NCBI GenBank assembly: GCA_977030845.1
Contig: OZ365116.1
Location: forward strand, 13,144,001-13,208,000
DNA: 64,000 bases
Direction: 5' to 3'
DNA from: Fimbriosthenelais zetlandica
Lineage: Eukaryota
The notes under the pieces are model-generated. The model did no database searches, was not told the origin of the DNA, and saw only the letters and a list, made by a program, of their open reading frames with translations. Below are positions 6,106 through 37,289 of the stretch, piece by piece. How positions within the stretch are numbered: the stretch's first letter is position 1; each line of letters starts with the position of its first letter. The translations under genes and the position numbers were made by a program.

Positions 6106-6117
6106 CTTAGAGTAAAA
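6106..6117. mobile_element. Half copy of the CTTAGAGT palindromic element
   Basis: TAGGAA-CTTAGAGTAAAA-TAGGAA: a single arm between 6-bp direct repeats. Confidence 0.5.
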
Positions 6118-6199
6118 TAGGAATAAAAATTGAGCTAGAAATATATCCTGGAAGAGTATTCATCACTTTTCCATAAGCACACAGCTACTTCTCCAGGTG

Positions 6200-6250
6200 A
6201 GGGCGTTCCCCGAGCACGTGACCTGAGACGCGCGCTCTCATTGGACGACT
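6200..6250 (+). promoter_or_regulatory. CpG-rich promoter-like cluster upstream of exon B
   Basis: E-box CACGTG at 6215-6220, ACGCGCGC at 6228-6235 and reverse CCAAT (ATTGG) at 6240-6244, about 250 nt before ATG 6495, in an otherwise CpG-poor background. Confidence 0.5.
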
Positions 6251-6494
6251 CCAGAAATGGAGGGGATTTTGAAATGCTTATCCATGAGACGCAGCTGTCG
6301 TCTGCGGTGCCGGGCTATAGGCGTGTATACAGTATAGAGCTCTACTACTGACCTAGCGGAACACATGCCTGCCCCCACCACAACACACACACCACACACA
6401 CTGGCCAGCACCGGCCCAGTCAGGACCATAATACCGACTAAAGGAGTACGAACGTGAACATTATTAAGGATTTTAAAAGAAAAAACACAGGACA

Positions 6495-6639
6495 ATGTGG
6501 TACAACGGTGAACATCGTGGACGGCCTAAATATGGGAGTAATTTACCAGCCAAAAAGCCGAGATCTAGAGGGGAATACGAAGGTGGTTTATCATCGGAAA
6601 GTGAAGTTTCTGATGATGACTATGATACAGAGAGTATGG
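6495..6639 (+). CDS. ANKRD6: Candidate alternative first coding exon B of ANKRD6 (48 aa, acidic Ser-rich end)
   Basis: Reads MWYNGEHRGRPKYGSNLPAKKPRSRGEYEGGLSSESEVSDDDYDTESM, then a G|GTAAGT donor at 6640. Phase 1; promoter-like cluster just upstream. Confidence 0.65.
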
Positions 6640-8432
6640 GTAAGTTGGATTTTAGACTGATATACTTGAACGATTGTGGCACGCGCCTGGTCGTGGACTC
6701 AATGTTTGACTTCTTATCGCCTTATCTTTGAAGTAAATCCTTGTGTCTATATGTATAGGGATGATAGGTCGCGTGCAAAGGATTTATCACAAACTTGTGG
6801 CCTCATATATGTTGAGGTAGTCTTCTATTTTTGACTCAAAACATTGGTCAGCAGGCAATGGTATTAAATTGCAGGCCATTGACCAGTCGTATTAATAGTA
6901 ATACACATGGTCCTTTCAAAGCTTCAACTTTTGTAAATGATTAATTTCTTGAATGAAAAAATATCTGACCCCTATCAGTCGAAATGGACACGTATATAAC
7001 CGAGCGTAGATTAATTAAATTCATTTGAATCTAAGATATGAGAAAGTGTTGAGACATATGAGAAAAAAAATTATTATTCGTCTAAGGTGACTTTACTTAA
7101 GACTAAGGCAAGTCTACCACTTTTATAGTTTGACAGTTGGACTCCAACCCACACCAACAGATGTTTTCTTCGTGACAGTTAGCCTTATGACGTCATTTAA
7201 GCATCATTTGGTAGTAGGTTTGGGCTGCTGCTAACAACAAATTAACTCCTTTCTTTCAATAATTAGCTGACAGTTAACAGGCAAATTAGGAGGGGGACAT
7301 ATTAATACATTCCCTGCTATCATGACATAAAATGAATAATTATTATAATGAAATGACTTATCACATGCAGTCTTCTATACGACTTATCTGAACTTTCTAA
7401 AGGTGAAAACTGTTTGGATTCTCCAAGAATTAGTGGAGTTATGGACATTCAAAGTTGCACACCTGTCAACATTTGGGATGAAAGGCTTAACCTTAGCATG
7501 CCTAAGGGATGGAAATCTCTTTCAATGAAATCTTGTGTCAGTAATGTCCACTGCAAGGAATTTATGACCCACTCAATTCCAGTTTTTCTGACCTTTTGTA
7601 TATCCTTTGATATTTGCTTTTTCTTAGCCCATTTTTATAATGCCAGCCATATAAGTATATGAAACATGACTACATAACTTGGAGGTTGGACAATACACTT
7701 TGTCTTCCGAGCCTGTTTTATATCAAATGCCTTAAAAGCCTTAGCCAGACTTGAATTTTATTGTACTCATTTTCTGGATGGCAAGTCTTACCCCCCTCAG
7801 TCATAATGATGAGACAAGGTGACAAATAACGTTACAAAGCCGGGGGCTGGCCCCCGACTCGTCCTATCACTTCACTCACACCTACTCCAACTTTTATGAG
7901 CCCCTATAAACATTACACAGGGGACCACAAAATGGTTGAGGCCAACCGCAAAAGTTATTCAAATATTGAATTGTACTACTTTTTTAATTGCCTTTGGGTC
8001 AATTAACATGGGATATAAAGTGTTTTTTGGGCAATAGAGGTGATATGTTCAATTGAAGAACTACAAATATGTATGGGATGTTATGGCATTTTAGTCGTTG
8101 GAGGTTAAATTCAGGTGCTTGACATATACTCAAGTGAAGGCACGTCCGTTGGCCATTGTGACCTCTATATTTTAGTTGCCATGGTTACGACATGAGATGA
8201 CCGAGCCCCCATATGACAACCAGTCAACCTTCTATACTCGACTTAAGAGGAGAAGAGTATTCCGTAACATCTCTGACAGAATTAAGTCTTTAAATGGGAA
8301 TATGTGTGTTATATTATTAATGTCACTTTCCCCCCAAAGATTCATATAGTTGATCCTCAGATTGTATAAGACTTGTAGTTCAGAAGATAGTGTTCTTTAA
8401 TGCTTGGTACATTATAAAGTCATTATCTATAT

Positions 8433-8462
8433 CTTAGAGTCAAATGTTTGTTTTACTCGAAT
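8433..8462. mobile_element. Ultra-short palindromic transposon scar, 7-bp TSD TCTATAT
   Basis: TCTATAT-CTTAGAGTCAAATGTTTGTTTTACTCGAAT-TCTATAT. Confidence 0.75.
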
Positions 8463-10221
8463 TCTATATAAAACATGCCACTCCTTTATGCAGGCTATGT
8501 CTCTCTCAGGCCCATCCTCTACGATTTGTTCACGTTTGATGTGAAAAGAGTATGCCTCTAGCTATAGCTCTTTTATTTTGGAGTTAATGCTGAAAATCCA
8601 GGGTCGATATGGGCCGGGGGCATACACATATTTCATCATATACCAACATGTCATATTCCCTACAGAACTCCCTCACTTTATCGACCAAACTCCCATCCAT
8701 AATCTCTGTAATGTTAATCACTTTCTGTCACGATTTGACAATAGTCAAAATCACTTCTCTTGAAATCCAATTCATTGGAATTACTTTTCCAAGTGTGTTG
8801 AGGTTGCATGTTTTTGTGACATGCCAGATTTCAGACGTTTTTGTATTGACAGAATGTGTTTGAAGCATTTTTAATTGATTATTTGGATAAGCTTCCACCA
8901 TAAAAGATGTATATAGAAGAATTTGAACTTGTCAGCATTTTGGTTACACCCGGGCCTGGGCGAAAGGTGAGAGAAATATGGCACATAGATGACCCCTATG
9001 TTTGGCTAGCTTTAAGTGCAATTGAATCTGGCATCATGCTGTAAAGCCCAACTGTGCTGACAACTCAATCAAATCCTGTCAAAAACTATGGCAATAACAT
9101 GGAAATGCTTCTACCATTAAAATTGTGATACTTTTAATATGACATAGCTAAATGTAGTTTCTGGAAGTTGAAGTTCATATAGTTCGTGTAAGAATGATGA
9201 GTTGGGTGATGGAAGAAAATGGATGAATTCAATGGAAAGTTGTAAACTGTCAAGTAAGAATCAGATGGGATTGTATACAGCAATATGCTTTTCTAGGTGA
9301 GAAAGGATATTTGAATTATTGAGGTACCTTTTATGGAGCCAGATACAGGTTAATCCATATGCTAATAAAGCAGGTTAGATCAAAGCCAGACTATCTCATA
9401 TATCTCATCAATGGCCCCGATCAATACTAATATAACAAAGCAATGACAAATACTTTATGGCATCAAACTTTCATGGACCTGACAGTCAATTTTCCACTCA
9501 TTTATGAGCAAATAAATTCATGCAGCATCCGCAGGTGATAACCACAAAAAGATGCACCAACTTTAACTACAAAAAGATGCACTAATTAGTGTGTTATAAC
9601 ATCAAAGTTATAATTAACCGCATTCCTCCCAATTAAAGCTAGTGGTTCACATGTAACATTGCCACTATTTTCATATGCGTAATCCTCACCTATCTCAGGG
9701 GCATTAGTGGCTTTCTTTCTTCTTTAAATTATATTCTCAGCTTCCTAACTTCAAAGGCTCTAATCCTGTTTATCGCACTATTCGTATTGTTCACAGATTA
9801 ACGGTATGTCCTTTTTATAATCTTCGGAAATAATAAAGAGGATATATGATATTTTGAGGTATTGTTTGTCGCGGCTGGAAGCAAAATTATGATATTAACA
9901 TCAAAGCTTTCCTTCAATGTGGAATAATAATCTGTTCTCTATGTCTTAACCCGCATATTGGGATTTCCCGATGAATTAATTCACCATACAATACTCTAAG
10001 AAGTATACCATTAAGAACTTCCCTATACCACAATACAAGAATTCATACTTGATTTCCGTTAATTTCATGCCCTCCAAGACAACAATCAGCCAGAATAATA
10101 TTATGTATGGCCCATGCCTGTGGCTGTTTGCCTTTGTCGTAGGAGTATAAAACAATTTCTGTTTTTCTGTTGGGGGACAAAGGCATGTTGTATTATTGCT
10201 TCCGTCCCGGGCCATTGTGGA

Positions 10222-10291
10222 ATGATCTCGCGGATTAGTAGGTGTAAGGGGATCCGACTATCAAACCATTACCTACCACCAACAGCCTCAG
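10222..10291 (+). CDS. ANKRD6: Candidate alternative first coding exon C of ANKRD6 (MISRISRCKGIRLSNHYLPPTAS; upstream in-frame ATG at 10114)
   Basis: Open frame ending at a CAG|GTGAGG donor (GT at 10292), phase 1. No homology recognised. Confidence 0.35.
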
Positions 10292-11175
10292 GTGAGGAAA
10301 TTGGTAGAACAGTACACTTAAATGCATCTTTTTTTCTTTTCTCTCTATTTTTGTCTACCCTAGTCGTATAACCAACACTACTGGCTCTTATTGCAAGTGT
10401 TATATTTGCCTCCTGCCAGAGGGCACTGACCAATGGTCAAGTGTCCACCTCTCAAGTTCACCTGTAAAAGCCCTTTGACCGTTTTACACCTTAGTGAACC
10501 CATCTACTTTCCCGGTCCTTTAGCTAGAAAAGATATCATTGCTTGGACTTTATTTTAGTGCTTTAAAGTTTGGGTTTCGCGCTAAGAGATAGAAGAGTGG
10601 AGCAAAGGTGAAATTGGTAGACGCAGTAAAAAAATAAATAAAACCATTATGGGTCATATGTTTGCAATGAGTACTGTGGCAGGTCAGACCTAGGGGTTAC
10701 CTTTTGTTGCCCCTAATGGACACGGCCCTGACAGATGTTGGTCAACTGGTCAGTTACAGGTGTCAGATGCCCACAGGGAAGGTCCAGTGGAGGGGTGGGG
10801 GAGGCTGGGGGGTGGTCAACAGAGGGTGACCACTTCCACACCTATGTCCACTGCACTGACCCGCCCCCTATTTGAAAGAACACAAAACAGTGTCTTTGAA
10901 AGTCCTCCTGATGATGGGGGAGGTTAGTCATCGTCGGATGGTTACTTGTGTGCCTGTCACATAATTAGACAAGCCTTGATTAAATCTTTCTTAATTAATG
11001 ACTGCTTCACCTGAAGGACCATCTTAGGCCACGCGCCCATTACAGACCACGGGGTGCCGGAGCCAGTGTCCAAATGGGACCAGATTTCAGGTCCAAACAC
11101 GGCTGGGTTCTTTAAAAATAAGATTTGTTTTAATATTTGTTTTTATTCTTAAAGAACCATTTTCATAGATATGAC

Positions 11176-11198
11176 CTTAGAGTAAGATACACTCTAAG
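11176..11198. mobile_element. Ultra-short palindromic transposon scar, 7-bp TSD ATATGAC
   Basis: ATATGAC-CTTAGAGTAAGATACACTCTAAG-ATATGAC. Confidence 0.82.
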
Positions 11199-11764
11199 AT
11201 ATGACATTCCATGGTATAGAATACCATTTTGTCTCTGACCATTCTGTGGTTAACCGCAAATACTTATACATACAAATATATACACCTCAATGGGCAAACG
11301 TATACATAGCACTTCTGGCCACAAAAGTGTGCCCCTTGGGCTTAGCCTACATTTTTTGGTCTTCCCACTTATGTGCCTCATTTGGAAAGAGTCTATCACT
11401 TCTAGTCCTAACAAAAACAAAGTATTCGCTCTAAAATATATTGGGACCATTTTCAAATTGAGACCATTGTGCTGATGTTTCCTCTTCTCCCGCCAATACC
11501 GCCGTACGTTGAGACATTGTGGCGGTTCCGTCTTTTGAACCCTGGTGATTAATTGTCGTTTAGGGCAGCAGGTGTCACGTCGATCAGCAGGTGGGTGGGA
11601 TGGGTAGTGAATGCTTGCACTGCTTGCTTTAGTAGACAAGGTGATCATCTGCCCTGGGTTTGCTACATGGGTAAAGCTTCTCATATTTCTCACCTGTCTC
11701 AAAACCAATAGTAACGTTCAAGTAGGCCTAACCATCCACCTGCATTTTTATATTATGCTGACAT

Positions 11765-11788
11765 CTTAGAGTAAAATGAAACTCTAAG
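11765..11788. mobile_element. Ultra-short palindromic transposon scar, 7-bp TSD CTGACAT
   Basis: CTGACAT-CTTAGAGTAAAATGAAACTCTAAG-CTGACAT. Confidence 0.82.
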
Positions 11789-11925
11789 CTGACATAGAAA
11801 GAGGAGAATTGATGGGTAAAGAAGCCATTTTTTATCAGAACCTTTTCCCTGATAATCTTGTCCCTTGGTTATTGTTGCTACAATATTGTACATACACATG
11901 ACTACCTGAAATACGATGATGTAGC

Positions 11926-11949
11926 CTTAGAGTAAAATTTTACATCAAG
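11926..11949. mobile_element. Ultra-short palindromic transposon scar, 7-bp TSD ATGTAGC
   Basis: ATGTAGC-CTTAGAGTAAAATTTTACATCAAG-ATGTAGC. Confidence 0.8.
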
Positions 11950-14900
11950 ATGTAGCGTATCGGTTGAATACAATGTCCCTATAAATACAAATTATAGAAC
12001 CCCCTTCTTCCAGCATTATAAAGACTCCTTTTATATAAAGGAAATACGTTCACAAATAAATGAATTTGAAGAAATGACCCCTAGGATTAAGGTCTCTGTT
12101 GAAGGTTGCTTCAGAAGCCCTTTTGTGGCCAGCCAATGAGACTATGTGTTTTTGCTGGACCAGCAGAACTGATGAAGCGAGATGAGAATGAGGGCAATCC
12201 TTTCATCATTATTGATGATGACAAACGAGTTGACAGAAACTAATTGACTCGTTAGCTCTCAGATTCACATTACCGGTATAAAGAAACTTGAGATCCTTTA
12301 TACTAGGTTTACATCTTTGTTTCTGTTAAGTTGGCAAGGTGATAAGATGAGTTTTCTTATTCATGAGAAATCAAATCCATCTAGGTTTACTAAAAGGGCA
12401 CTAAGGAATGCTAAGACAGATTGGAAACAGGAAACAGATTGGATTGCAGAAAGAAACATGATGTTTGAGATAACATTATTTTAGCTTGTAGCTATTTGTA
12501 TCATTTGGCTCCCGTGCTTCTTCCATTAGGCTCCCGATTAAACAAATTGTTGTCAAGGAACCGATCTATCATGGTAGCAGCCGGTGTGATGTGAAGACAG
12601 GCACCATCATTATTGTTTCCTCTCAACACACCAGGTGGCGTGGCAGGCAGGCAAATGTGTGACCCAACTTAATAATGAATCCTCGCTCTGTTTGGACTCG
12701 GAGGTCGGGTCATTTTGGGTTCAGATATACCAGGGGATGGTGAGAAATAGCCGTGAGTTAAATCTACGAAGTAGACATTGAGTCAGAGAAAATGGACGTT
12801 TTACCCAGAAATAGAAGGGTAAAATATGTATTAACCAATACAGTAATATTCTTTTTAGGTTTCCTGAAATAAAGAAGATTGAGGGGCCTATTTGAGTAGG
12901 AGAAAGTTTCGTTTGCCTGTGAAGGTACGGAAAGTGTTGACCCTAGCGGTTGGCCTAGGTATCACTTAGTGTAGCCGTTTGCCACTATGTGGCAGCAGGG
13001 AGGCAGGACCAGTAAATTATCAGATGGCCTTAAATCATGTGAAATCATGTTTAAATACCAATGAGTGGAAGTATCTGCCAATTGTTAGACGACTCTGTTG
13101 GAGGAATGTTTATGTATAGAATATTAATATTGATATTCACATAAAAAATACTATATTTACGAGCTGTACCGTCCAGAAAAACTGTATGAATGTACACATG
13201 AACCTTTTGTTCAGACTAGTGTACAAACATACCAAGATGTGAATAGCACCAGCACGAATCCCCAGGCTATCCCGTCTGTAACAAATTCTATATAAACCTG
13301 CACCCCTTACTACTCTCCTCTACCTATTGACAAAGCCATGTTGGCGCTACAGGTGCCTTGGGGGAAAAGTGCCTTAGGGATTCTTTGTGATGCAAACCTG
13401 ACTGACTCACAAGCACCACTTAATAATATATACCGAGTTAGCAAGGGGAAACTTGTGAATCAAATGGAATTGAATTCCAGACTTTCAATAGTCTCCCCTT
13501 GACTACTTTACATAGGAGTTGTATATGAATTGATCCTTTGTATTGAATGCACCTCTCTTGATTTAATGTCTACTGCTAATGATTAATATTCAAATTTAAT
13601 GCGGGTAAACTACTATAGTGCCTACTTGATATAAGTGCATGTGTATTGTGATTCAGAATAATAGGATAATTGGAGGAAACTCGGGAGGTAGCTATGTATA
13701 AGCATTAGTGTTCGTTTGCCACTATTGAATATGCATACCTGATAACAATGCTTTTGACACCCATTGTTCTATTGAGAATTAAGATGGAAATGAAAGATAC
13801 AGTCTACATTTTATAATAGAAATCTGCTTTTGGTATAAGCAGTAATCCTATATGGAGTCCCGTGAATTAAGAAACTCAGCTTAAAAAGTTCATTCAAACA
13901 GGGACTAAGATTGTACTGTATTCCATATAATTAACACTATGGTTACGTTTAAAGCCTGGGGCATAATCCCGTTGACACAGCTTTATTCTGTTTGCTTGAT
14001 GCACCAGTAATTCGCAACCCTTTCCCCCTACACCCCCAATTCCTCTCCTAATGAGCAAGTATTCATTCTATTTACTCTAATTACTTTAATCATATTAATT
14101 ACCCCCGGCGTTCGACCTCCATCTTTTGTTACATTCCCCATTGGATTACCAACTATGCTTTGTGTTTTTCAGTAATACTCACAATTAAGGTTTAACCGGA
14201 GGCATTTTCCATAGATCTTCATACCTCGAGATAATCAACTGGAGTTTAATTTATAGTCTGTGGAGTGCCAGATTACTTTGAGCTTGTTTACAAGATCAAA
14301 GAACCAGAACCGAACTCTGCATTAGGATCTTTTAGCCAGCAGTTGATATCTGAATGCCTCTGTAGAAATCTTGAGGAAATTGACTTAAAATGGTCTCAAT
14401 TGGAAGGCACCATTGTGGTCCTTCCAAAATTAACCCCAAATGCATGTTCTTTCCTTTTCCATCCCCTTTCCAATAGACTCTGTACCCCTCTAAACGGAGC
14501 ATGTCCACGGGTCCACAATTCACACCTGGATACCCCACCTGGCGTCTACCTCTGTCATTAACAGCCAGGAGTTTTATATATCATGATATATGACCTTCAT
14601 ATATAACGTTATATACATGTTATATACATGTACATGGCTCTGGCCAATAACTCCCACTCCCTACTGCCAAGAACACCACCTGTACTCATGCGTGCCATGT
14701 CAACATATCAATTACCCATTACAATTATCAACTGTACTCATGTGAATTTACTGCTAAACATGCAAATTCTGTGCTGATTAGATAACCCCATTTACAGCAA
14801 AAAATGCAAACTGATAATCATTGCCCACCTATGGCCTGGAGAGGCCATTTTCTATCCAGTTAAAAAATATATATTTCTAAGACCATGCTCTGTTAGTGAG

Positions 14901-17900
14901 AAGCCTTTGAGTTAATCTTCAATGGAGTGATAATAAAGAACTTGTGAATGGGTATAAGAGAATATGGGACTCCTGACAGAGATCCAAAAGCTTGAGTAGA
15001 CCATGAATATTTGGGTTGTCAGGATGCAACCATGGTTGGCACTCTTTTAAGTCTACAAGTATAGGAAGATCAACCAACCTGCGTGTGTGGAAAATATGTT
15101 CATATTCTACTTACACGCATCACCTAATACCTATAGATCAAAGGATTACCACAAAAATGTTAAAGGTTTTTTCCTTACAGAAATTGCTTCGAATTGTCAC
15201 AAATTCCTTCTTGAATTTCCATGTAAAATGATCGGTTATGAGATATCATCAACTCGAAGACTATTATTGTAAGATCTTAAGGATCAAAAATACTTGTAAA
15301 ATGATAGCTTATGTCATATCGTATTACCAATATTGCTATTGGATATTACTATGGGAAAAAATCCCCTCAAGCTACCTCCGAGTCTCAGTTTAACTAGGTA
15401 TCTGACCCTTTTTCTACCCCAGAATATGCAATATATCTATACCCCTTTTTCCTACTGTTGAACTTTGATTCCCATCACCGCTGGGGGTGCTCTACTAACT
15501 CTAGTAACTTGTGAGCTGGCAGCTGTGATCTACCTGTGAAAGAGGTGTGTGGTGGATGCAGCTTTAACTGGCACCCTCACTAGCTGAAGTGTGGGCCATG
15601 TGGAATATATAAAGAGTATGGGAGGAGAAGGAAGAGAAGGGAAGGGATAGCAAGAGAGATTGATATGCTCTAGAGCCTACATAACACCATGAGGTCACAA
15701 CTATATAGACCATTCTTACGGATTTAAGATTGATCATTGTTACGTTTGGACATTATCAAAATCATTGGTTCCTCTAGATCTTCAGGTGAAAGAGATACAC
15801 AATTGTCACATGGAAGTGTCTAGTTGCCATGACTACAGATTGACACATATTTGTATGAATGAAAGTCCCCCAGTGTATATGGAACCCATTGACCCAGGCC
15901 CCAAGTGTATGTAGGGAGAGAAGGAGTGAGTGAGGCATCTATATAGCCTTAAGTTCTCATAACATGTTACCACTTGGTTGAGTGAGTACTCTTTCTGACT
16001 TGACTTAATAGCTTAATCCAGACTTGGGCATTCACACAGTCAACATTAAGCTGGTTTGGGAGTATGTATACAAACTTATAACATCACATGGATGTACTAG
16101 TGAAGGAGGTGGCTTCATGGCCATTTACATGAAGGATTTACATGTGTCTGGAGCATGTGGAGGGGCACATCCATGCACCTATCCCTTCCTGTGTTCCTAC
16201 TTCTTAAACCTTGGACAGAAAGTACCTAATATTCCTTAGCTGACCATTTCCAAGCAATTTCCTTCAGTTGCATCAATGCTTCCAATTGAAATTTCTCCAT
16301 AACATATTTCAATGGGATCGTCAGGTGGATGATGACTTTGTGGTCTTGTACCTGGGTATGTTAGGTCACCTCCAGGGCTTACCTGGCCAGGTGAGATGAG
16401 TGGATACCTGCCGGTTACCTTGAAGTTCCATATGTTAACCCATCACCTGTGGACACGAGATGATTTACTCAGAGCTCCTGACATGACAAAAACACTGCCT
16501 CATACAGGTGGGAAGTGTTAGTGGATAGATTCAGTCCCTGGTCAGACAGGTGGGCTATATAATACCATATATATAACCAAAAAGAAAGATACATCTCCAT
16601 ATATAGAGATACAGTGAAGCATTCAATATGAATGTGGTAAAATTGATTATGGATTATATTATGCATCGGATCCATATTGAACATTGTCTATAGACCACAT
16701 CGGTCAAGGGAGATCAATACTCTGTGCTCTTTTTCCCCCAGTCTGGGAACTTCAGAGGAACTGCTGGATCAATCGATAAAGTATCCACCACACGTTTCAC
16801 TGAGCCTGAAGAAGACCTGGTGTATATGTGGGAATCACCTTTATTGATTACCTGTGGATTGTATTGGGGATCTGACTCGCAGATATTAACTTTGTTTATA
16901 ATTGAGTCAAGCATTGACCTATGAGATCGGGTGCTGAATATGGATTATATATCGGATTTGGCCTGGGTCAAGTGCAGTATATTGTTTTATGATGGTATAA
17001 ATTTGCTAAATTCCAAGTGGCATTGACATTTGTGTTAAACAAAGCAATAAACAATTGTCCTTAAAAGCCCCAGGAATTGACTTATGGGATCATGTGTTTA
17101 ACAGGGCCTGTTGGGTTTCTGCTGAAGACACAATCGAATTAAATATTGATTCTTATTCTACTGCAACTAACTGAAAGATCAGATGAATGAAGGTCAATAC
17201 AGAATTGTTATTTTGGAAGTCTTGTCCTTGCATATCGATCTAACAAGTGATGTGTGTCTAGCATGATAGATTCAATTACATTAATGTCTCCAGCCTACAG
17301 ATTAATACTGGATTATCTGATTGACATCATCGATCACCTACAGCTTTTGTCTGATTTACCTGCCCGTGCCTCAAGCAACAGACAGTCCCATTCAATGCTA
17401 ACAATCCACAGATACACATGGGTATTTTACAAGTGACTGAATTTGCCTTTGACAAATACACTGTATCAATGTGAATATTAGGACATTTCCCACTCTCCCA
17501 TCATCAGCATAGCTTGGAGTGTATCCTGGATTCTTATTTTACTGATTCATTATCTTTGCATGACTATCTGCACAACAGACAACACAAATAGTTGTCAGGG
17601 AATTCCTGGATTGCCTAGCATTACGCCCTTATAAAACATCATTGACATTATTATGGAGCTCTAAGGGCACTGGAGACACTCGTTATATTAAACCATTTAT
17701 CGATAAAAATCGTTAGTCATTGATGAAAAATTAACATCGGTGAAATTATCCTGCCTTTGTGGAACGCCATGGAGATGTATGAATGATTGATCTGCTTTTA
17801 ACAAGGCTTGTGGTGAATGTTCCCCAGTGCAACTGATCAATCCAACCTTCCTCAAAAACTCAAGTCTACGTTTCCTGCAGGCTTTCTTTGTCTTTGAGCT

Positions 17901-19104
17901 CTAATTACTCGAGACAGTTTCTTGATGATTCTCTATCAGGCAATGGGACACTTACGTCTAGCCCTCAGCGATACCAGAATATATCTACCTGAATTTCTTT
18001 GAGTTTCACCTGTTTCATTCTAATCCCAGGAAAATCAACTTAATTCTTCCCCACTTAACTCTACCTGCCTATATTGAGTCTGTTTAAAATCCAAAAAGGA
18101 TTTAATAGCAAGGAGAGAAAGTCTTTCTTTTCATTGTGGATTTGGGGTTGGTTTATAGACAGCACTTGTCTGCTACATCCATTGTTACCTGAGAATTGAC
18201 CATTCATCACTATTCACAGATAGCAATCACCACTTGAAGAAGGTAGAACCAGCCAGGTGAGACAGATACAAGGTGGTCATCGGGGCTATAAGATAGCATC
18301 AATCCTCCCCCTCTCCCTCTGGCTATTAGCCCTGGCCACTTATACAGCCAGACTGACAATTGACATCTTATTTTGTGCTCAACTGTGTGCTTTAATCTTT
18401 TGATGGCCACAAGTGTGAATCTAGATCTGATACATAATTGGATAACTATCAGCCTCTTGCTTTATAAGGCTCAATTATCTGAAGCCAGACTTCAAATGTT
18501 GTTGACAGTTCCCTCAATAGGATTGATCTTAAAAATAGGACCGGTTTGAGAGATGCATTGATAGGAATTAAATGGGAAATGTCACTTCAAAACTTTGAGT
18601 TCATTTGAAGGGAGTTTGAATCCTGATTCGGCGTAGTGGAGGTCAGTTGAGGTTCAGTAAGATTGATTGGTCAATGTTCAAGGTTGGTGTTGTGTTTAAG
18701 CATCGACCAGGGGAAGTAAGAGGGAGGCCTATCCCTGCCTGACTTATTGCATTTGTCTGTTCATGACAAAGCCCCCTGGAGTTAGCATTGGTGCCATGGT
18801 TACCAGGCTTGGAGGCTGAGGAACAGTATTTGTATGGCGGGCGGCAGGTGGTGATAGTGGGCAGGTGGGGGGGGGGGGAGTTGAGGGAGTGCACCTACCC
18901 ACCATCCACCCTCCCCCCCTCCCCCCTCCCACCTTCTCCAATTGTATTGATGTGTGCTGCATGTAAAACACCTTCAGTAGGCAGGAGAGGTGCATGTTGT
19001 TAGGATTAACTCTCATGGAGTGAAACATGCTGGAATTAAACCATCACGCATCAGACCAAACATTTCAACATGGATTAAAGTGATTATATCAATATTACAA
19101 CAAG

Positions 19105-21709: not shown

Positions 21710-24700
21710 GTAAGTTCATTCAGTCTCAGTTGGGTCAGATGATAGTTTCTTTTAGGTACTTCTTTATTTATTTGCTCAAGTTGAATCGTTAAAGTTCTGA
21801 ACAGGTTGATTTAGCCAGGATCCTAATCTTGGACTCAAACCAGTTCAGGTTGTTCACGAGCTAAGTTTTTTCTTCGTGCAGTACTGCCATGAGGATGATC
21901 ATTATGTATTGAAGGCTTTGTGAGTCTGAAAGCAGGCGAAGGACTTGCCCAGGTCTTGCAATTCCCAATTCTGAGCCAACTGACCGCATCATTGCACCTC
22001 AGCTATTTTCATGCCTCCATTCTTCTGCCAAGTCTTGTGACTTACACATGCACATGATTTTGGCACCGATAAATATCACAACAGATACTTGCAACTTAAT
22101 CTGTAATAAATAATAATCTTCTACCAGGACTTTGCCTGTCTAACTTTGCATGTAATTTGTAAACGATAACATTGTTTTTAATTAATGAGATTAATCATTA
22201 ATTGTATGCAATTTTATGCTGACCCTAGCCTTGCAATTCCCTGAGTAAATGTGAACACTGTTCCCCTTCCCCCAGTTATGTTTTTGTTGGAGGGGGGGAG
22301 GGGGGGTACATTCTGTGAATACTAGTACTAAGTGTTGCTTATATCTATGTCATCTCTGGCATTGGTCTAACCACGGAACAATTAACATAATTGCTGAAAA
22401 ACCAGGCCAAAGAGAGCAAGCAAATACAGTATCCTCATTGTCACACGAACATTTTAATGAACATTGTGCATTTTTTAACTCTTCCTTTGGTTACTAAGAA
22501 CAGTGATAGATTAGGATAGACAGACAAGTGAATTAGCTGGGCTATTATTCACACCCATTTAGGTGCTTTACCGGCCAGCTGGCACTAACAAAAACCTGAA
22601 TCAAATCCATTTCCGTTCGGTTACAATACGCATGCGTGACGGCCACTTGCGTGCGCATGTCACCCTGACCATGTGACATTTATTGATATTTCACGGATGG
22701 GAGAATTAGGCACGCCTTGTCATGAGAAAATAGCCCTAATATAGGTCAGCTGTCACCGGAACTTTTGTTTTTTATTAGGAAATTGTGGCTATTATCCAAT
22801 TAAACATTTTTCTATTATTGGTTTCCAAGTTAGATAACGCGTGCCATTGTGGAAATAAATCATGTGTTGAATATGATGATTTAATCAACTTTAAAAGGGT
22901 TTCCAGGTGTATTAGAGAGTTATCTGTTATTCCCCTGATGAGTATATAAGTAGGCCTATATGGTTAATCCTAGGTTTAATCCCCACAGATCAAGATGAAT
23001 TCAATATCAACCTTGTTTCATTAGACATCATATTTTGGATGGGTGTCGGCCATTTTAACTCCGACAATTCTTGAAGTACCACTTTCTCTGTCATGCTTCA
23101 TTGAGGTTTTCTTTGATCACCAAGTTCTCCACGGTCGAGTGGCTCTCGTGTCCATGGAAATAGAAAACCAAATTAATCATTGATCAAGACACAAATTCTA
23201 CCTTCACTTCTTACGTCTGAGCAGCTCAGTTACAATGTCAAAATGGCGAAGTGCTGTCTCGAAAAGAACCTTTGTGGGTTCTGAATGGGAAGGCTGGGAG
23301 GGCCAGACAGGGGTATTATCAGGAGAACTATTCGTTGTGGTGTGCCACTTAAGGGCAATCTTTATTGTAGTTTTATCTATGAGTTATGGGATATTCATGG
23401 CCATAATGATCCACTCAACTTGATTGGAGTTCGATTGAAATGTGTATTATTCAAAGGAGTTGAGATCTGGGCTGGACTTGAATTTAGAAGACCCTTGAGT
23501 CAATATAATTAGATTAGCTCGCGTTTTCCCATTGGGCTGTTACCATTAACATTATTTTCAAATTTTGAAAATCCCCCAAGTATCTATGACTTTAATACAA
23601 ATCATTAACACACTTGTTTGTATACATACTCCCTATACCTACCTCAGCCCCACTTCAGTTTCCACTCTGGTGATCTCCACTATTCCATGCTTCCCCCAAC
23701 ACTTTGATGTCTACCCGCCTTTGATTCCACCTCCCCACCACAGCTCCCAGCATTAAAACTAGTTATTTTCTCACGCTGTGATTTCTACATTATTTATGTT
23801 GAACCTTTCCTACTGCACAATAGGCTCCCCATCAGTCCGTTATCAAGTCAGTCTCCATGCAGGGCGATTTTAACTGGAAAGGTAGAGCGATTATAAAATC
23901 AAATAAAAATCATTTTGAAATGCCCCAGAATAGATGGCAATCTAGGGGGGCCTAGATTCTACCTGTCTAATTACTAATATGACGAATCCTTGTTCATATG
24001 CCGTGTCATATATCTGAGTGGATATTTTATGGGATTAATTGCGTTTCTCTTTATGATATTCCTCAAGTGTGAAGTAAAACTGTTGCCTTTAAGTGGCTTA
24101 AATTTGTCAAAATTGCCAGGGACATCCTAACGTGTAAAAATAACTGCCCCTCCCATATTATCTCGGGTCATTATTATTGTTAAGTATTAACCGCTGACAT
24201 TGCTGTTATAAATTTGACATTTTTATTTATCTAATTATGCGTGAAACATGTCATTATTAGGCTGCTTGACACTGCATTACCCTTTGTCCTTTTGTTATTG
24301 TTTACCCTCCATCATTGTGATGTCGCTATCCCACTATAGGCGGCGCCACATCGCAAGGTGTCAATGACTGGCAATAGCTTCATGTCACCAATGCTTACCA
24401 ACCCATAATTCAATTGATCTAAACAAATTTGTAAATCAAAATAGACATATTGGTATAGTATATACTTAACAAATTAGGACAATTTTCTTGGGGACAAGTG
24501 GTTCAAATTCATATTTATTTGTTCATTATAATATTGGTAGTTCGCTCAAGAGATATGCCTCCCATGACATAGCATAGCACAGCATAGCATGCCATTCCTT
24601 TGTGCTTCGAATTTCAAATTGATTCATGTTGCCATTTAAATATATAAAAACAACATTCTATGATACAATATCAAAAATGGATCAAAGTACCGCTATGAAT

Positions 24701-27700: not shown

Positions 27701-30551
27701 CAACCCTCGAGCAACATAGAAGGTGTAACTAGGGGGTCACCAAATGGGCAACAAGAGCAAAATGTACCCACGTTCAACACCAAAGGGTGTATATATGAAA
27801 GGCCCTGTCCCCACACATACTAAACATACATAATGCCCCCTTGAGACACGCCCTGGATGGACGCCAAGCGCTGGGAGGGTCAAAGTAAGGTCGTTTCAAG
27901 GTCGTTGTCATGACTATGCTTGTACGGTGTATGCTCCAGAGGCTGAGTAAAGAAATGATGTGTGTTTTTGGTGTGGACATGTCTGTGGGAATAAGGGGAT
28001 GAGTGCAATAAAGCATGAGGATTAATGATCCTCAGTGCACTGGATTATACAGATAAAGTCAGGGCCATGCTCTGGGTGGTCACAAATATGAAGGATTGTC
28101 TATAATGCTTGTTAAATACCTCAGGGCTATTTGTCCTTGAAATCAGTGAATGCCCAAAGCTTTCAGGGCATTTCCAAGTTCATTCAGACTCATCAGATAT
28201 TCTTCTGACTCAAGAGGACTCACAACTATGACACAGAAAGAGAATAGATCGATGGTGCACTTTGTGTCTTTGTGGAATACACTCAGCCCTAAGCTATAAA
28301 GCCTTTGGCTTTTTGGGTTTGACTCTTGGCAGAGGATTGTATTCTAGTGAAGTCAATTAAGCTTTCTTGGGGAAAGTGGATATTTAACTACCATTACAAG
28401 TTAAGGTAGTTTAAATTTGTCCACTTATATATAGTTATTACATCTTTTATTGAATATTGCGGGTCAGAGACTTCACCATAGTCCTTGACAACATGGACAA
28501 CTGAAGACCTGAACTTGAGTGTTTGTTGGCTTATTCCTGCTTCTTATCTGCCCATACGATTACAGTGATCTGTAACTCATAAAGTTAGAGATAAGATACT
28601 TCCTACCAACACCTGGCAACACCAGGTGTGTCGGGGAAACGTTTCCCTCCTCCAATACTAACCAGGAGGCCTAATTAAGATTTTAACTTATATTTGGGTC
28701 ATCCTGGAACAGCTACTGTCAAATGAAAATGAAAGTATCGATTCTTAAACTGAGAACTGAGTTATCGACCATGATTGATAAGTTTTCTCGGGCTTTCTCT
28801 CATAAAACTGTCCCCTCATTGTCATAAACATTGCGACAACGTGACTGCAACCAGTTCTGCCGAAAGTCGGTTCGGTGCTTACCGTTTACGACAATCGCGA
28901 CATTTGGCGGTAGCTACTCTCTCCCCGCAGGCTGATCCTGGGGTCAAAGATTAACATTTTGCTGAAATTATGATGGTTTATGTCCACCTTCCATTGGTGA
29001 CGATTGAAGTGTAGTGTAATTAAGTCTAGCTTTTATGATTTGGACATCATAAAGTGGTCATTAAGCGTGCATTAATAACAGTGTAGACCTTTGATCTAAG
29101 CCATCGATTTTTGAACTTGTCAACCACTTGTTTGACCTTGAATAATACTTCCTATAGAAGGGTATAGTGCGAATGGGTAAAGCTATGGGATTTAATTATT
29201 CTTATACAAACAAATGTCGTTTCTCTTTTTGAAAAATCGGGTTTTGGGATGTAGCAAGGAAATGATATGAAGGGGGTCACAAAAAGGCTGGGAAACCTCT
29301 TGTGAAATGATGCCCTAGATGCCCTCCCATTACTTTCCCAGTCCAGCAACCTACATGTCCAATTAAATGGACGCCATGTATGAATTGAATGACGCTGAGT
29401 TGATGTTTTATATGCAAAGCAATGGTAGGAAAAGGGCCTTTACAAGATGCCGACTTTGGGTCTGAGGGCGGTAAAGATGAAAGTTGTAAGACAGGTGTCC
29501 TCCGTAGTATGTATACGGACAGATGAACACCTGTGTATTGAGGGCGCTGAGGGCATTAACCAGAGGTCATAGGTGTGGGAGGAAGACATGGCCCCATCAC
29601 CTACTGTAGGGAAGTGTAGCGACCTTCTAGGAATAGGGAATGAGACTATACTAGATGTATAGATAGAATCATTCCCATATTATATTATAGAAAGGAATAA
29701 TGATTGTTTTTAAGAAAATGAGAAAAATGGTGACTAATCATGATATGAAACTGATTTGTAATAATCAGTGACATATCTTCGAGATGCTTCTAGTTTAACA
29801 AATTCCCTCGGGCTTAATAAAATCGGATTTAATCCCTTGACTTTGGGATAAATATAGTTCCCACGGTTTCATTTATATCTTGTAAGCTTTTCTGGGAGAC
29901 ATTATTGGGTCCTTGAGAAAATATTGGTTTTAGAGATCACTGATGTTGGGGGCGGGGGTGGGGGTTCTCTATGGTTAAATTGACGGGAGCAATGAAAGCT
30001 TTTAACCCTCCCGCATGCTAGGATTTTCGAGATTACACCATTTGTGGCGGCTTCCTATTTATTCTGGAATTGGACGCTTTAGCATCCGTGAAGCTTGTTT
30101 GCCTTTCTCGCCATCAGGTGTCACACTGGATGGTCGTTTGTTGTTATGACGATTAGAAAACGTTCTAAAACAATCTGGTGACAAAATCGAATGCTTCAGA
30201 AATACAGAAACAATCCTTGACACCATAAAACAATGATCTAAAACCAGAGTTTGCTCTTAGCTGGCATGGAATGTTGTTGAAGTATTTCTGGAGTTTGGTT
30301 GCCTGGTTGCTGTTGATTTTATTAGCCATTTACAGCCCCATACCTCATACCACAGATCTGTGGCCTTTACAAACACGTAGACAGTCAGTTGTCTTACAAA
30401 TCTCTCCCCAACATGCCATAGCATGTCAGTGATCTATATTTGTGTATGCTGCACTTGTCTGTCATGTCTGTGAACATGCTAAACAGGAGAAACATCAGAT
30501 GCCCTCATCCCCAGCCCTCACACCTCTCACGCATGTTAATCTAACTGATAT

Positions 30552-30580
30552 CTTAGAGTAAAATGTTATTTTACTCTAAG
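30552..30580. mobile_element. Ultra-short palindromic transposon scar, 7-bp TSD CTGATAT/CCGATAT
   Basis: Perfect 13-bp stem CTTAGAGTAAAAT-GTT-ATTTTACTCTAAG; flanks match at 6/7. Confidence 0.82.
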
Positions 30581-31549
30581 CCGATATAGAAAAAGTTCAC
30601 CAGGCAGTCTCATATCACAAATTAAAGGCTGAGTTCTGATATGAAATTTAAGCAAATATATCTGAGTAATTCTTAGGAATCAGGACCCCCTGGTGACTCC
30701 ATGGTAGAAACTCCCAATATATATACTATATCATCCCCCATTCCTGTCCATCAATGCTTTGTCGGTGACCAGTGGGAGGGACCGAAAAGTCTCAAATGCT
30801 TGATAGATGTCCCATCTGTCCACCCTGTGTCTTGTGCCCCTTTTGAAGAGGGCTATCTGAGCTCTGAGAGCACACAATGTACACAATATCCAGAAGTATA
30901 GCGTGTACTAGCATGCCTGGGTTGGCCCTGTGAGAAAGTAAGTGAGAGTTGAGTTAGAAGGAGGGAAGTCATAATTATTATGTGAAAATAGTCCAGTGTT
31001 GGAAAGTGTGGAATTGAATAAGTTTGCAGACTGTTTGCAGGCACCTTTAGGCTACTGCTGCTTTCATGTTGTGTATTTGTTGGGGTGACAACATGATGAA
31101 TGTCTGTTTGTGCGTGCAATTAATGCACGCCTTGATTATGAAGGTGAAGAAAAGATTACATATGCTGTCCTTTGTACGGTCTGCCACTTCCGTTGCGCCT
31201 ATGGCTCCACTCCAGGGCAGACCTCAATTGTTGTTTGGTAGGGAATGAGTACCATAAGATACAATGATATCGTACAGCTGTTGGTATGACTGTCCATTTT
31301 TTGTAACTTGTTACTCTTCATATTGTGGCCCTGACAGGGACAGAGAGACTGACATACAGACAGACATTGAATTTAGGCCCGTGGTCATAAGAAAGGCGGT
31401 CTATAAGGCGGTGGGGGGCGGGGGGGGGGGGGGGGGGAAGAGAGGGAGAGGCATGTGTGTGTGTGTGGGCGAGCGAGGTGCATGTCAACAGGCGAGCGAT
31501 AATACAAGGAAAGAGTGGTGCCGATGAGAAAAATCCGAGAATGTAGATC

Positions 31550-31551: not shown

Positions 31552-31595
<44 letters not shown>

Positions 31596-31630
31596 GAGAG
31601 ACAGAGACACAGAGAGACAGAGTGGGAGAG
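31552..31630 (+). repeat. (GA)n microsatellite with GACA interruptions
   Basis: Direct reading. Confidence 0.95.
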
Positions 31631-31699
31631 ATTGTTAAGAATGTTGTTAGGATGCTGTAAAAGAAATGAGTGAAGTGTAGGCTACCTACCCTACCCTAT

Positions 31700-35274: not shown

Positions 35275-35292
35275 CCCCCCCCCCCCCCCCCC
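35275..35292 (+). repeat. Poly-C homopolymer (18 nt)
   Basis: Direct reading. Confidence 0.9.
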
Positions 35293-35310
35293 ACCCGCAA
35301 TTATATTTAT

Positions 35311-35331
35311 CTTATAGTATTTTACTCTAAG
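35311..35331. mobile_element. Ultra-short palindromic transposon scar, 7-bp TSD TATTTAT/TACTTAT
   Basis: TATTTAT-CTTATAGTATTTTACTCTAAG-TACTTAT; flanks match at 6/7. Confidence 0.7.
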
Positions 35332-35432
35332 TACTTATAAAAGACGATAGCCTGTATGGATAGATGTAGCATTAATATAGCCTAGTACATGATTGTATTC
35401 TACAATGGAATCAATATATTCTGTAATTTAAT

Positions 35433-35463
35433 CGTAGAGTTAAATGATTCATTTTACTCTAAG
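35433..35463. mobile_element. Ultra-short palindromic transposon scar, 7-bp TSD ATTTAAT
   Basis: ATTTAAT-CGTAGAGTTAAATGATTCATTTTACTCTAAG-ATTTAAT. Confidence 0.8.
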
Positions 35464-35527
35464 ATTTAATCAGGTCTATGTGGAATATATGAAATATAGG
35501 GAAGGGTATACATTTGGTTGGTCAGTA

Positions 35528-35551
35528 CTTTAGAGTAAATTTTACTCTAAG
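35528..35551. mobile_element. Ultra-short palindromic transposon scar, 7-bp TSD GTCAGTA
   Basis: GTCAGTA-CTTTAGAGTAAATTTTACTCTAAG-GTCAGTA. Confidence 0.82.
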
Positions 35552-37289
35552 GTCAGTACCATGTGTGACCATGGTAACTGTCCCTCTCACCCAGACAGCG
35601 GGGGTAGTGGACACACACTGGACATTGGTCAGTCAACATTGACCCTGTAACTAGAGCAATGGTCCAGATTGTCTATACCAATGATGGATGGGATAAACAT
35701 CCTTGGTCTCGTTGGTCTCTTTGATGATAGATTTCAATCGGAGTCGCCAAGCAAGTGGAAACGCACTTCTGATTTATGTGACAAATGGGGATTCAATCCT
35801 AATGCATGAGATGCATTACTACGGTCCCTCTCATAAAAATGATTGAGAATTCGAGATGTTTGAACTCTCTTTTAAAACTATACAACCCATATCTATGACC
35901 CCCTTAAGGTATTTTTCTCGAGTGTAGACAAATTACTGAACAATTTGGGGGTCATTGATTTACCTAGGACTGGGGCTTATCGTCGCGTGATCTTCCGTGA
36001 TTTAGCGAGACTTGTCTGTGGTGACCATTTGCTCCTTTCAGCCCTTCTTTCAGAGGTTACGACCTTGAGTTAAGCATCTCAGGTTAGTAATTAGAGAGGC
36101 TGATGGCGATGGCGCTTTATGATAACTACAAGGGAGCCGCCATCAAAAGTCCGACAAAATCAAGACGATATGTATTATCATAGAAGGTCCACCTGAGTAG
36201 AACATCTTTGAAGGACTTCGTCTCATCATATATGTTCCTGATCCCTATTTTACGACATTGTTCCAGGTCCCTATTTTACGACATTTAACACCCTTTAATA
36301 TGTGGGTGCCTGTCCTTGGGACTGTTATGTTAAAAAGAAATTTGAGGTTTTTTCAACAATGGCTGTCAAGAAGGTTAAAAAGATAGGGGAGGATTAAAAT
36401 AATGCCCCAGGCATCAGTTTACACTGATTAGGGACAGATCGTATATAGCTTTCAACTGCTTTCTACTTTGGGAATGCTGTGAGAGCCAGTGTAAAGCCAA
36501 AGACAAGAGGGTGGTCGTATAAAGCTTTATTATGCAAGGGATGAGATTCCCATATATTCATTGATGGTTGTATACAATAGGTATAGGTCCATAAAAATAT
36601 ACGGCATAATAATACATAATGTATGAAGGTTCTATATATGTCTGATACATTGTATGTGTCATCTTTTAGACGTTTTTAAAGTCATTGAGTACGGTATGCA
36701 TTGTTTCAACCCCTCTGGCAGATTCATTGGCAGTTTATCCTATATGTTGTACTGTAACAATAGACAATGCATCAATATAACAATTTATAATATATGTGCC
36801 TTCTATTAGGTCTACCAGCATTGATATTTTCCAGATGTATAAGTAGATTCTCAAAGTACATGTAGTTCCATCTCGCTGACCCTACCGGCAAACAGCATAT
36901 CACTTCCATTGAACTATTTAAGATATAACCTCTCCATATTGTTTACTCTTTAGGGCTTTGACACGTACAGAAACCATAAATACATATTTATATTACATTA
37001 AAGCTTACATAAGGCATAAAAGGTGGGCCTCCCGCTATGCCTTCCCCACTGTGGAGGCTTTCACCCAACATTATTGAACCATAACAGGGCGAGTAAATAA
37101 AATACCTCCCTCAATATATAAAACAGGGCAATCATATATAGGACAGACTTGTGTTTGATCTGAAGTAGGAGACTATTTCTACCAATACTCAGAAGATCCT
37201 ATGTTGACCCTTCATCTGAATCCCTCCTCAGCACTTCCCCCGCTCTTGGGAATCTTTTGTCTCGTTAGGTCTCTACCACCGCGTGAAAG

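What the first reader, a model, noticed from the sequence alone, without database searches (positions are those of the whole stretch)
6106..35558. Family of 21-31 bp palindromes, each in its own 7-bp target-site duplication: probable excision scars of an uncharacterised P-like DNA transposon
Seen: eight complete copies (8433, 11176, 11765, 11926, 30552, 35311, 35433, 35528) and one half copy (6106) share ends CTTAGAGT(AAAATGA)...(TCATTTT)ACTCTAAG but differ at the centre, keeping about 8-15 bp of each arm. Each complete copy lies between a different 7-bp direct repeat (6 perfect, 2 with one mismatch). The repeats show a symmetric nTnnnAn bias (T at position 2 in 6/8, A at position 6 in 6/8). 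Established: Drosophila P transposase leaves long (17-nt) 3' overhangs, end-joining often leaves a short piece of each TIR between the TSDs, and P-superfamily TSDs are 7-8 bp. Inference: these are footprints of an element with TIR CTTAGAGTAAAATGA.., or else among the shortest mobilisable MITEs. Repeat finders would normally miss 24-bp objects.
Basis: partly seen in the sequence, partly recalled or inferred. Interest (0 to 1): 0.82.

Follow-up and report, generated by a model that had tools for sequence, protein, structure and literature searches.

The report
Scars left by a jumping gene
Ten tiny mirror-image DNA inserts in this animal's genome, each sitting in its own 7-letter duplication, are most likely the scars left when an unidentified jumping gene cut itself out; they look just like laboratory P-element excision scars, which makes them a tidy but not revolutionary find.

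Summary
Eight complete 21-31 bp palindromes and one left-arm-only copy sit at the stated coordinates. All share the ends CTTAGAGT..ACTCTAAG and each lies between its own 7-bp direct repeat (six perfect, three with one mismatch). I found a tenth, older copy at 7005-7035.

No other palindrome-plus-duplication family exists in the window. The flanks are unique, and nine unrelated metagenome matches to the same palindrome have no such duplication.

The retained arms never exceed 16 nt, and four arms stop at exactly 16. Centres differ by microhomology joins or a few filler bases. That is the layout of laboratory P-element end-joining junctions: duplication, up to 17 nt, filler, up to 17 nt, duplication.

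Target sites show a mirror-symmetric T2/A6 bias (14/18, p=2.4e-4), as does the 7-bp consensus GTAGTAC of Galileo, a P-superfamily element. The copies are clustered (p about 0.002-0.01).

Best reading: excision footprints of a cut-and-paste transposon that makes a 16-17 nt staggered cut. P-like is an inference. No parent element, transposase or empty site could be reached, because no other DNA of this species was available. A new member of a known kind; moderate interest.

The parts
6099..6123 (.). One-sided footprint. Flanks CTAGGAA / ATAGGAA (6/7) enclose CTTAGAGTAAA, 11-12 nt of the left arm. The right arm is removed exactly to the duplication boundary.
6998..7042 (.). Probable tenth, older copy at 7005-7035, 31 bp. 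The right arm matches the 16-nt consensus at 14/16, and the left end is CGTAG as in 35433. The flanks AACCGAG / ATATGAG match only 4/7.
8426..8469 (.). Footprint 8433-8462, 30 bp, with perfect duplication TCTATAT. Left arm 14 nt. Right arm either 12 nt plus TTTG filler, or 16 nt with two mismatches near the join.
11169..11205 (.). Footprint 11176-11198, 23 bp, with perfect duplication ATATGAC. Arms 10 and 8 nt, with filler GATAC. AAGATA also occurs at the right element/duplication junction, so the filler may be templated.
11758..11795 (.). Footprint 11765-11788, 24 bp, with perfect duplication CTGACAT. Arms 16 and 8 nt, no filler.
11919..11956 (.). Footprint 11926-11949, 24 bp, with perfect duplication ATGTAGC. 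Arms 13 and 13 nt, joined on the 2-nt self-complementary AT.
30545..30587 (.). Footprint 30552-30580, 29 bp, with duplication CTGATAT / CCGATAT (6/7). Left arm 14 nt. Right arm either 13 nt plus 2 filler bases, or 16 nt with one base missing.
35304..35338 (.). Footprint 35311-35331, 21 bp, with duplication TATTTAT / TACTTAT (6/7). Arms 9 and 13 nt with a 1-nt overlap.
35426..35470 (.). Footprint 35433-35463, 31 bp, with perfect duplication ATTTAAT. Arms 15 and 16 nt, no filler. This is the longest copy and defines the TIR consensus CTTAGAGTAAAATGAA.
35521..35558 (.). Footprint 35528-35551, 24 bp, with perfect duplication GTCAGTA. Arms about 11 nt (with a 1-nt insertion) and 13 nt. The join is essentially the same as at 11926.

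Best explanation
These are excision footprints. A cut-and-paste DNA transposon with terminal inverted repeats beginning CTTAGAGTAAAATGAA inserted at each site and duplicated 7 bp of target. It prefers a symmetric nTnWnAn target.

When it later excised, its transposase cut one strand at the element boundary and the other strand about 16-17 nt inside each repeat. Each donor flank therefore kept a 3' single-stranded tail of repeat sequence. Host end joining then sealed the two tails in one of three ways: nearly intact (29-31 bp products), annealed on the small self-complementary AT in the tail (24 bp products), or after trimming and short fill-in (21-23 bp). In one case a whole tail was clipped at the single-strand/duplex boundary (6106).

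The clustering fits repeated local reinsertion of the element or an insertion hot spot. Such a long stagger is known only for P-element transposase, and 7-bp duplications occur in the P superfamily (Galileo, 1360), so the parent is most likely P-like.

Shown directly: the copies, their duplications, the arm-length cap, the target symmetry and the clustering. Inferred: the staggered cut, the repair route, and above all the superfamily. I put about 0.7 on footprints of a long-stagger transposon and about 0.5 on membership of the P superfamily.
For: - Termini are enriched and every pair of termini encloses at most 31 bp; no long element carries these ends in the window.
- Each complete copy has its own 7-bp direct repeat, 6 perfect and 2 at 6/7. 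The half copy is also 6/7.
- Generic scans for any short palindrome with a flanking duplication find only this family in 64 kb and no family in 78 kb of related animal DNA.
- Nine unrelated metagenome matches to the same palindrome pattern have 0/9 flanking duplications.
- The flanks are unique, so this is not a segmental duplication.
- Arms are 8-16 nt and never longer. Two arms are exactly 16 (11765 left, 35433 right). Two more are 16 if a mismatched or 1-nt-deleted inner end is allowed (8433 right, 30552 right).
- 11926 and 35528 share the join predicted by annealing on AT.
- Published P{wa} junctions have the same layout: 8-bp duplication, up to 17 nt, 0-15 nt insertion or microhomology, up to 17 nt, 8-bp duplication (PMC2895639). 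The 17-nt stagger, local hopping and preference for promoters are reviewed in PMC7776569.
- Target symmetry T2/A6 is 14/18, Monte Carlo p=2.4e-4. Galileo's 7-bp consensus GTAGTAC has the same T2/A6 (PMC2775673).
- Clustering: p=0.002-0.01 against uniform placement.
Against: - No parent element with these termini is in the window, and no transposase was found.
- No empty site could be examined. No sequencing run was listed. The nearest relative in the protein collection is too diverged for non-coding alignment.
- The sample is ten copies from one window.
- The terminus CTTAGAGT does not resemble the Drosophila P end CATGATG (sequence as printed in PMC2895639).
- The stagger of most other superfamilies has never been measured, so exclusivity to P is an argument from present knowledge.
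- Two 31-bp copies share the left-end variant CGTAG. This could mean shared descent rather than a parental repeat variant.
Confidence: 0.7

Rival explanations
1. They are extreme internal-deletion derivatives. After excision, the gap was partly refilled from the sister copy (synthesis-dependent strand annealing) and then joined, leaving only the outermost bases of each end. Any superfamily with a 7-bp duplication could do this, and no long stagger is needed.
For: In Drosophila most P{wa} repair products in wild type arise from incomplete synthesis followed by end joining (PMC2895639). The products would also carry duplications and variable centres.
Against: Such products usually retain tens to thousands of bases per side. 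Here all ten objects are 31 bp or shorter, no arm exceeds 16 nt, and several stop at exactly 16. That pattern points to a fixed physical limit rather than random synthesis tracts.
Confidence: 0.14
2. They are copies of a roughly 32-bp palindromic micro-MITE (16-bp repeat joined to 16-bp repeat) that is itself mobilised in trans. Its centres were later eroded by deletions.
For: Four of ten copies are 29-31 bp, close to a notional 32-bp unit. The two 31-bp copies share the left-end variant CGTAG.
Against: - No two copies share a centre, and none is the intact 32-mer.
- Substitution divergence from the consensus is only about 5% (my count). Ordinary decay would therefore give far fewer than one indel per copy, yet every copy differs at the centre.
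- At 6106 the missing arm ends exactly at the duplication boundary.
- A 32-bp duplex cannot fold to bring both ends into one transpososome (established DNA stiffness; inference).
Confidence: 0.07
3. They are footprints of a transposon from a superfamily other than P (for example an unusual hAT, MULE or Dada lineage, or an undescribed one) that happens to make 7-bp duplications and a long staggered cut.
For: The terminus is unlike the Drosophila P terminus. The nTnWnAn target resembles the hAT nTnnnnAn rule (my own knowledge). Cleavage chemistry is unmeasured for most superfamilies.
Against: hAT, MULE and Transib make hairpins on the flanking DNA, so their footprints keep no repeat sequence (PMC5499845 abstract, and my own knowledge). 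hAT duplications are 8 bp and MULE duplications about 9 bp. Dada is specific for small-RNA genes (my own knowledge).
Confidence: 0.2
4. They are chance palindromes or copies spread by segmental duplication.
For: None beyond the short size of the objects.
Against: Termini occur 13 times against 1.76 expected. Duplications are present in 8/8 complete copies against about 1.7e-3 each by chance. The flanks are unique. Unrelated matches to the same palindrome lack duplications.
Confidence: 0.01

Closest known systems
End-joining footprints of the Drosophila melanogaster P element (17-nt 3' tails; Beall and Rio 1997 as reviewed in PMC7776569; junction tables in PMC2895639)
   Same: The layout is the same: target-site duplication, a piece of each inverted repeat no longer than the stagger, and a join by microhomology or a few inserted bases. 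There is a pile-up of near-full tails and an occasional complete loss of one tail. The copies are clustered, which matches local hopping.
   Different: The duplication is 7 bp, not 8. The terminus is CTTAGAGT, not CATGATG. The cap is 16 nt rather than 17. These are old genomic fossils, about 5% diverged, in a non-Drosophila animal rather than products recovered in the laboratory. The transposase is unknown.
Galileo / 1360 (Hoppel), P-superfamily transposons with 7-bp duplications (PMC2775673)
   Same: The target-site duplication is 7 bp. The target consensus is near-palindromic with T at position 2 and A at position 6 (Galileo GTAGTAC).
   Different: The paper describes Galileo as having long, internally repetitive repeats and does not mention footprints. 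No sequence similarity between the termini was established. No full-length element was seen here.
Tc1/mariner excision footprints (2-3 nt of each end between TA duplications)
   Same: The principle is the same: a staggered cut leaves element bases at the donor site. Other first-stage notes on this genome propose TA-based footprints (s1-228808 and others, unverified).
   Different: Here 8-16 nt are kept per end and the duplication is 7 bp rather than TA.
MITEs (miniature inverted-repeat transposable elements)
   Same: Inverted-repeat ends, target-site duplications, no coding capacity.
   Different: These objects are 21-31 bp, well below the sizes I know for MITE families (my own knowledge). Every copy has a different centre, so they are not amplified copies of a master element.

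Membership tests
P superfamily of DNA transposons | Target-site duplication of 7-8 bp | tested here: met
   A 7-bp duplication is present in 8/8 complete copies, 6 perfect and 2 at 6/7. An 8-bp or other length is excluded by the scan.
P superfamily of DNA transposons | Long (17-nt) staggered donor cleavage that leaves repeat sequence on the flanks | tested here: inconclusive
   This is indirect. Arms never exceed 16 nt, and two to four arms sit at exactly 16. That fits a 16-17 nt stagger, but it rests on ten copies and there is no biochemical mapping.
P superfamily of DNA transposons | Transposase with an N-terminal THAP domain and a P-type RNase H catalytic domain carrying a GTP-binding insertion | not testable with these tools
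   No parent element is in the window. No other DNA of this species was reachable.
P superfamily of DNA transposons | Palindromic target-site motif centred on the duplication | tested here: met
   The symmetric T2/A6 count is 14/18, p=2.4e-4. Flanking T(-3,-2)/A(+9,+10) shows the same mirror trend. Galileo's GTAGTAC shares T2/A6.
Excision footprint (as opposed to a mobile element) | Independent, non-identical junctions at each site, built only from the outermost element bases plus filler or microhomology | tested here: met
   The ten copies have ten different centres. Joins show 0-2 nt of overlap or 2-5 nt of filler.
Excision footprint (as opposed to a mobile element) | An empty allele or orthologous site carries a single copy of the 7-mer, and an occupied allele carries the full element | not testable with these tools
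   No sequencing runs were listed. The closest relative aligns only in exons and a few conserved islands.
MITE | Many near-identical copies of one internal sequence at different sites | tested here: not met
   No two copies share a centre. Lengths are 11, 21, 23, 24, 24, 24, 29, 30, 31 and 31 bp.
hAT superfamily | 8-bp duplication, and footprints without repeat sequence because hairpins form on the flanks | tested here: not met
   The duplication is 7 bp and an 8-bp scan gives 0 hits. 8-16 nt of each repeat is retained.
Tc1/mariner | TA target-site duplication | tested here: not met
   The duplications are 7 bp and differ from copy to copy.

The most novel reading that the evidence does not exclude
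The window preserves a fossil trail of local hops by a previously undescribed P-like transposon lineage in a non-insect animal. Its footprints report the length of the transposase's staggered cut (16-17 nt) and the host's end-joining habits without any biochemistry. Other first-stage notes on this genome mention further 7-bp-duplication palindrome families. If those notes hold up, footprints could form an unannotated repeat class numbering thousands of copies. That class would allow a genome-wide reconstruction of excision history and of repair signatures in a non-model animal.
Probability: 0.4. Interest if true: 0.6.

Novelty: new member of a known kind. Interest (0 to 1): 0.48.

Why it matters
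Excision footprints are well known from the bench but are rarely catalogued as natural, fixed genome features, because objects of about 24 bp escape repeat finders. Here they form a recognisable family that carries mechanistic information: the duplication length, the target symmetry, an upper bound on the staggered cut, and the host's joining preferences.

If the census extends genome-wide, three things follow. It would point to an uncharacterised long-stagger (P-like) transposase outside Drosophila and vertebrate THAP9. It would give a sequence-only way to infer the cleavage geometry of unknown transposases. It would also show how much of a genome's small-insertion load comes from transposon traffic that left no element behind.

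For this window alone the practical outcome is modest. The scars are non-coding, lie upstream of or between genes, and have no evident function.

Tried and rejected
- **Parent element in the window.** A 15-mer repeat search with up to 3 mismatches, plus inspection of every hit, found no long element. 6106 does not pair with 7035 or 10000.
- **Paralogous empty sites.** A self-BLAST of all flanks found no paralogous sequence.
- **Allelic empty sites from reads.** Two searches for sequencing runs listed none, so read laying could not be used.
- **Orthologous empty sites.**
  - Homologues of the two long exons reach only 48% and 85% amino-acid identity.
  - The nearest relative (Logan run ERR14368248) aligns only in exons and a few conserved islands.
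  - None of the fetched related loci carries the repeat.
- **Metagenome scan for the two-armed pattern**. It gave nine hits. None has a 7-bp flanking duplication, and several sit inside longer hairpins in which the flanks are themselves inverted repeats (my reading: probably terminator-like, origin not checked). They served only as a negative control.
- **Literature search for the terminus.** It returned only primers and unrelated sequences.
- **Earlier notes of this scan.** None covers this place. Two unverified first-stage notes elsewhere in the genome describe similar families with 7-bp duplications.
- **An 8-bp duplication that includes the terminal G.** Four of 8 copies have G at -8, but this would make the element asymmetric, and the mirror position +8 is not C. 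Rejected.
- **The hAT-style reading with TAGAG as the true terminus.** Rejected, because the CT/AG bases would then be neither duplication nor element.
- **The lone ACTCTAAG at 9993.** No partner and no duplication, so treated as chance.
Full report
**Observation**

The 8-mer CTTAGAGT occurs 13 times on both strands of the window against 1.76 expected, and 0 of 100 dinucleotide shuffles reach 13. Three copies are perfect CTTAGAGT..ACTCTAAG pairs within 20 nt, against zero expected. The 15-mer CTTAGAGTAAAATGA with up to 3 mismatches gives 16 hits against 3.4 expected.

Reading each site confirms eight complete objects:

| Object | Length |
|---|---|
| 8433-8462 | 30 bp |
| 11176-11198 | 23 bp |
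| 11765-11788 | 24 bp |
| 11926-11949 | 24 bp |
| 30552-30580 | 29 bp |
| 35311-35331 | 21 bp |
| 35433-35463 | 31 bp |
| 35528-35551 | 24 bp |

A left-arm-only object lies at 6106-6116. Every complete object sits between a 7-bp direct repeat, and every repeat is different. Six are perfect and two match 6/7. The half copy also has a 6/7 repeat (CTAGGAA/ATAGGAA).

From the window's base composition I calculate that a random 7-mer pair matches with at most one mismatch about 1.7e-3 of the time. Eight of eight therefore cannot be chance.

A relaxed two-arm scan added a tenth, more decayed 31-bp copy at 7005-7035. Its right arm matches the 16-nt consensus at 14/16, including all six inner positions. 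Its flanks match only 4/7.

**Controls**

- A family-blind scan for any 7-nt-armed palindrome with a flanking duplication of 5-9 bp finds only this family and one microsatellite artefact in 64 kb. The same scan over 78 kb of DNA from related animals finds only isolated chance hits.
- Nine exact matches to the two-armed pattern in public metagenome contigs have 0/9 flanking 7-bp repeats. Several sit inside longer hairpins whose flanks are themselves inverted repeats.
- The flanks of the ten copies have no paralogues in the window, so segmental duplication is excluded.
- No long element bounded by these termini is in the window.

**Anatomy**

Aligning all arms gives a terminal repeat of at least 16 nt, CTTAGAGTAAAATGAA. 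Position 9 varies: mostly A, C in two arms, T in one. A left-end variant CGTAG appears in two copies, so more than one parental repeat variant existed.

Retained arms, left/right:

| Copy | Left / right arm (nt) | Join |
|---|---|---|
| 6106 | 11-12 / 0 | right arm absent |
| 11176 | 10 / 8 | 5 filler bases |
| 11765 | 16 / 8 | none |
| 11926 | 13 / 13 | 2-nt overlap |
| 35311 | 9 / 13 | 1-nt overlap |
| 35433 | 15 / 16 | none |
| 35528 | about 11 / 13 | |

No arm exceeds 16 nt, and two to four arms end at exactly 16.

Two copies (11926 and 35528) share the join CTTAGAGTAAAA(T)TTTTACTCTAAG. That is the product expected if two identical 3' tails anneal on the self-complementary AT at positions 12-13.

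At 6106 the missing arm ends exactly at the boundary with the duplication. That is where a single-stranded tail meets duplex DNA.

**Mechanism**

P-element transposase cuts the 3' strand at the element boundary and the 5' strand 17 nt inside the inverted repeat (PMC7776569). This leaves 17-nt 3' tails on the donor DNA (PMC2895639).

The junction tables of Chan, Yu and McVey (PMC2895639) show products of the form: 8-bp duplication, up to 17 nt of the left tail, microhomology or a short and often templated insertion, up to 17 nt of the right tail, 8-bp duplication. The objects here have the same layout with a 7-bp duplication and a 16-nt cap.

I therefore infer the following sequence. A full-length element inserted at each site and later excised with a 16-17 nt stagger, and the donor ends were sealed by end joining. 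The insertion is shown by the duplications. The stagger and the repair route are inferred.

**Target choice and distribution**

The nine well-preserved duplications have T at position 2 in 7/9 and A at position 6 in 7/9. Counted symmetrically this is 14/18. A Monte Carlo test that allows any mirrored position and any base gives p=2.4e-4. Positions -3/-2 (T) and +9/+10 (A) show the same mirror trend, which suggests a roughly 13-bp palindromic target, TTnnTnWnAnnAA. A symmetric target is what a two-fold symmetric transpososome produces. Galileo, a P-superfamily element with 7-bp duplications, has the consensus GTAGTAC, also with T2 and A6 (PMC2775673).

The copies are clustered. Five of the original nine lie in 5.9 kb and three in 240 bp, with none between 36 and 64 kb (p=0.002-0.01 against uniform placement). 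This fits local hopping or hot-spot insertion, both documented for P.

The 35.3-35.55 kb trio lies about 3 kb upstream of the start codon (38481) of an ANKRD6-like gene. A link to its promoter is only a conjecture.

**Age**

By my count, about 10 changes in about 212 arm positions separate the copies from the consensus. Three of 63 duplication positions differ. The copy at 7005 is much more decayed. The scars are therefore not brand new and span a range of ages, and the parent may no longer be active.

**Rivals**

- *Gap-repair deletion derivatives.* These would also carry duplications, but they should show arms of many lengths. Here every pair of termini in the window encloses 31 bp or less.
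- *A mobile 32-bp micro-MITE.*
  - No two centres agree, and no copy is the intact 32-mer.
  - At about 5% substitution divergence, ordinary decay predicts far fewer than one indel per copy, yet all copies differ at the centre.
  - A 32-bp duplex cannot bring its ends together in one transpososome.
  - The two 31-bp copies that share CGTAG are the one observation that leans this way. A parental repeat variant explains it equally well.
- *A non-P superfamily with a long stagger.* This cannot be excluded, because the parent was not found. hAT, MULE and Transib are unlikely because they form hairpins on the flanks and leave no repeat sequence. Their duplications are 8, about 9 and 5 bp.

**What could not be done**

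- No sequencing run holding this DNA was listed.
- The species is absent from the protein collection. The best homologues are 48% and 85% identical.
- The nearest relative aligns only in exons and a few conserved islands.
- The literature search for the terminus found nothing relevant.

As a result, neither empty sites nor the parent transposase were examined. The P label rests on the 7-bp duplication, the inferred long stagger and the Galileo-like target symmetry.

**Verdict**

- The footprint interpretation is well supported by internal evidence and by comparison with experimental junctions (confidence about 0.7).
- The P-superfamily assignment is plausible but untested (about 0.5).
- This is a new member of a known kind of feature. 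Its main interest is that it records the cleavage geometry of an unknown transposase, and that such scars may be a common, unannotated component of this genome.

Noticed in passing
window 7036-7065: A 10-bp direct repeat, ATATGAGAAA, occurs twice 10 bp apart immediately to the right of the decayed copy at 7005-7035. It may be a second small rearrangement at the same site. Unexplained.
   Followed up: partly
window 38481-48666 (+): An ANKRD6 (Diversin)-like gene. The start codon is at 38481 (MATTASYIPG...), ankyrin-repeat exons lie near 44.95, 45.75 and 46.35 kb, and the long last exon is 47239-48666. The last exon is 85% identical to an ORF in Logan run ERR14368248 and weakly similar to rodent ANKRD6.
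   Followed up: partly
window 19105-21792 (+): An 895-aa, serine/proline-rich and apparently disordered single-exon ORF with no Pfam match. It is conserved over 97% of its length at 48% identity in a related animal (P0001), with conserved non-coding islands at 15827-15920 and 18758-19005.
   Followed up: partly
window 35275-35292: An 18-nt poly-C run lies directly upstream of the three-footprint cluster. A similar C-run motif is matched in reverse at 31416-31437, near a (GA)40 microsatellite at 31552-31631.
   Followed up: no
window 9993-10000: A solitary ACTCTAAG with no partner arm and no flanking duplication. It fits the 1.8 chance occurrences expected, but it could also be a one-armed scar with a flank deletion.
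   Followed up: partly
window 8429-8473 versus 30548-30592: The two footprints and their duplications align over 46 bp at 83% identity, because the targets are similar (TCTATAT versus CTGATAT, both followed by A-rich sequence). This probably reflects target preference rather than common descent.
   Followed up: partly
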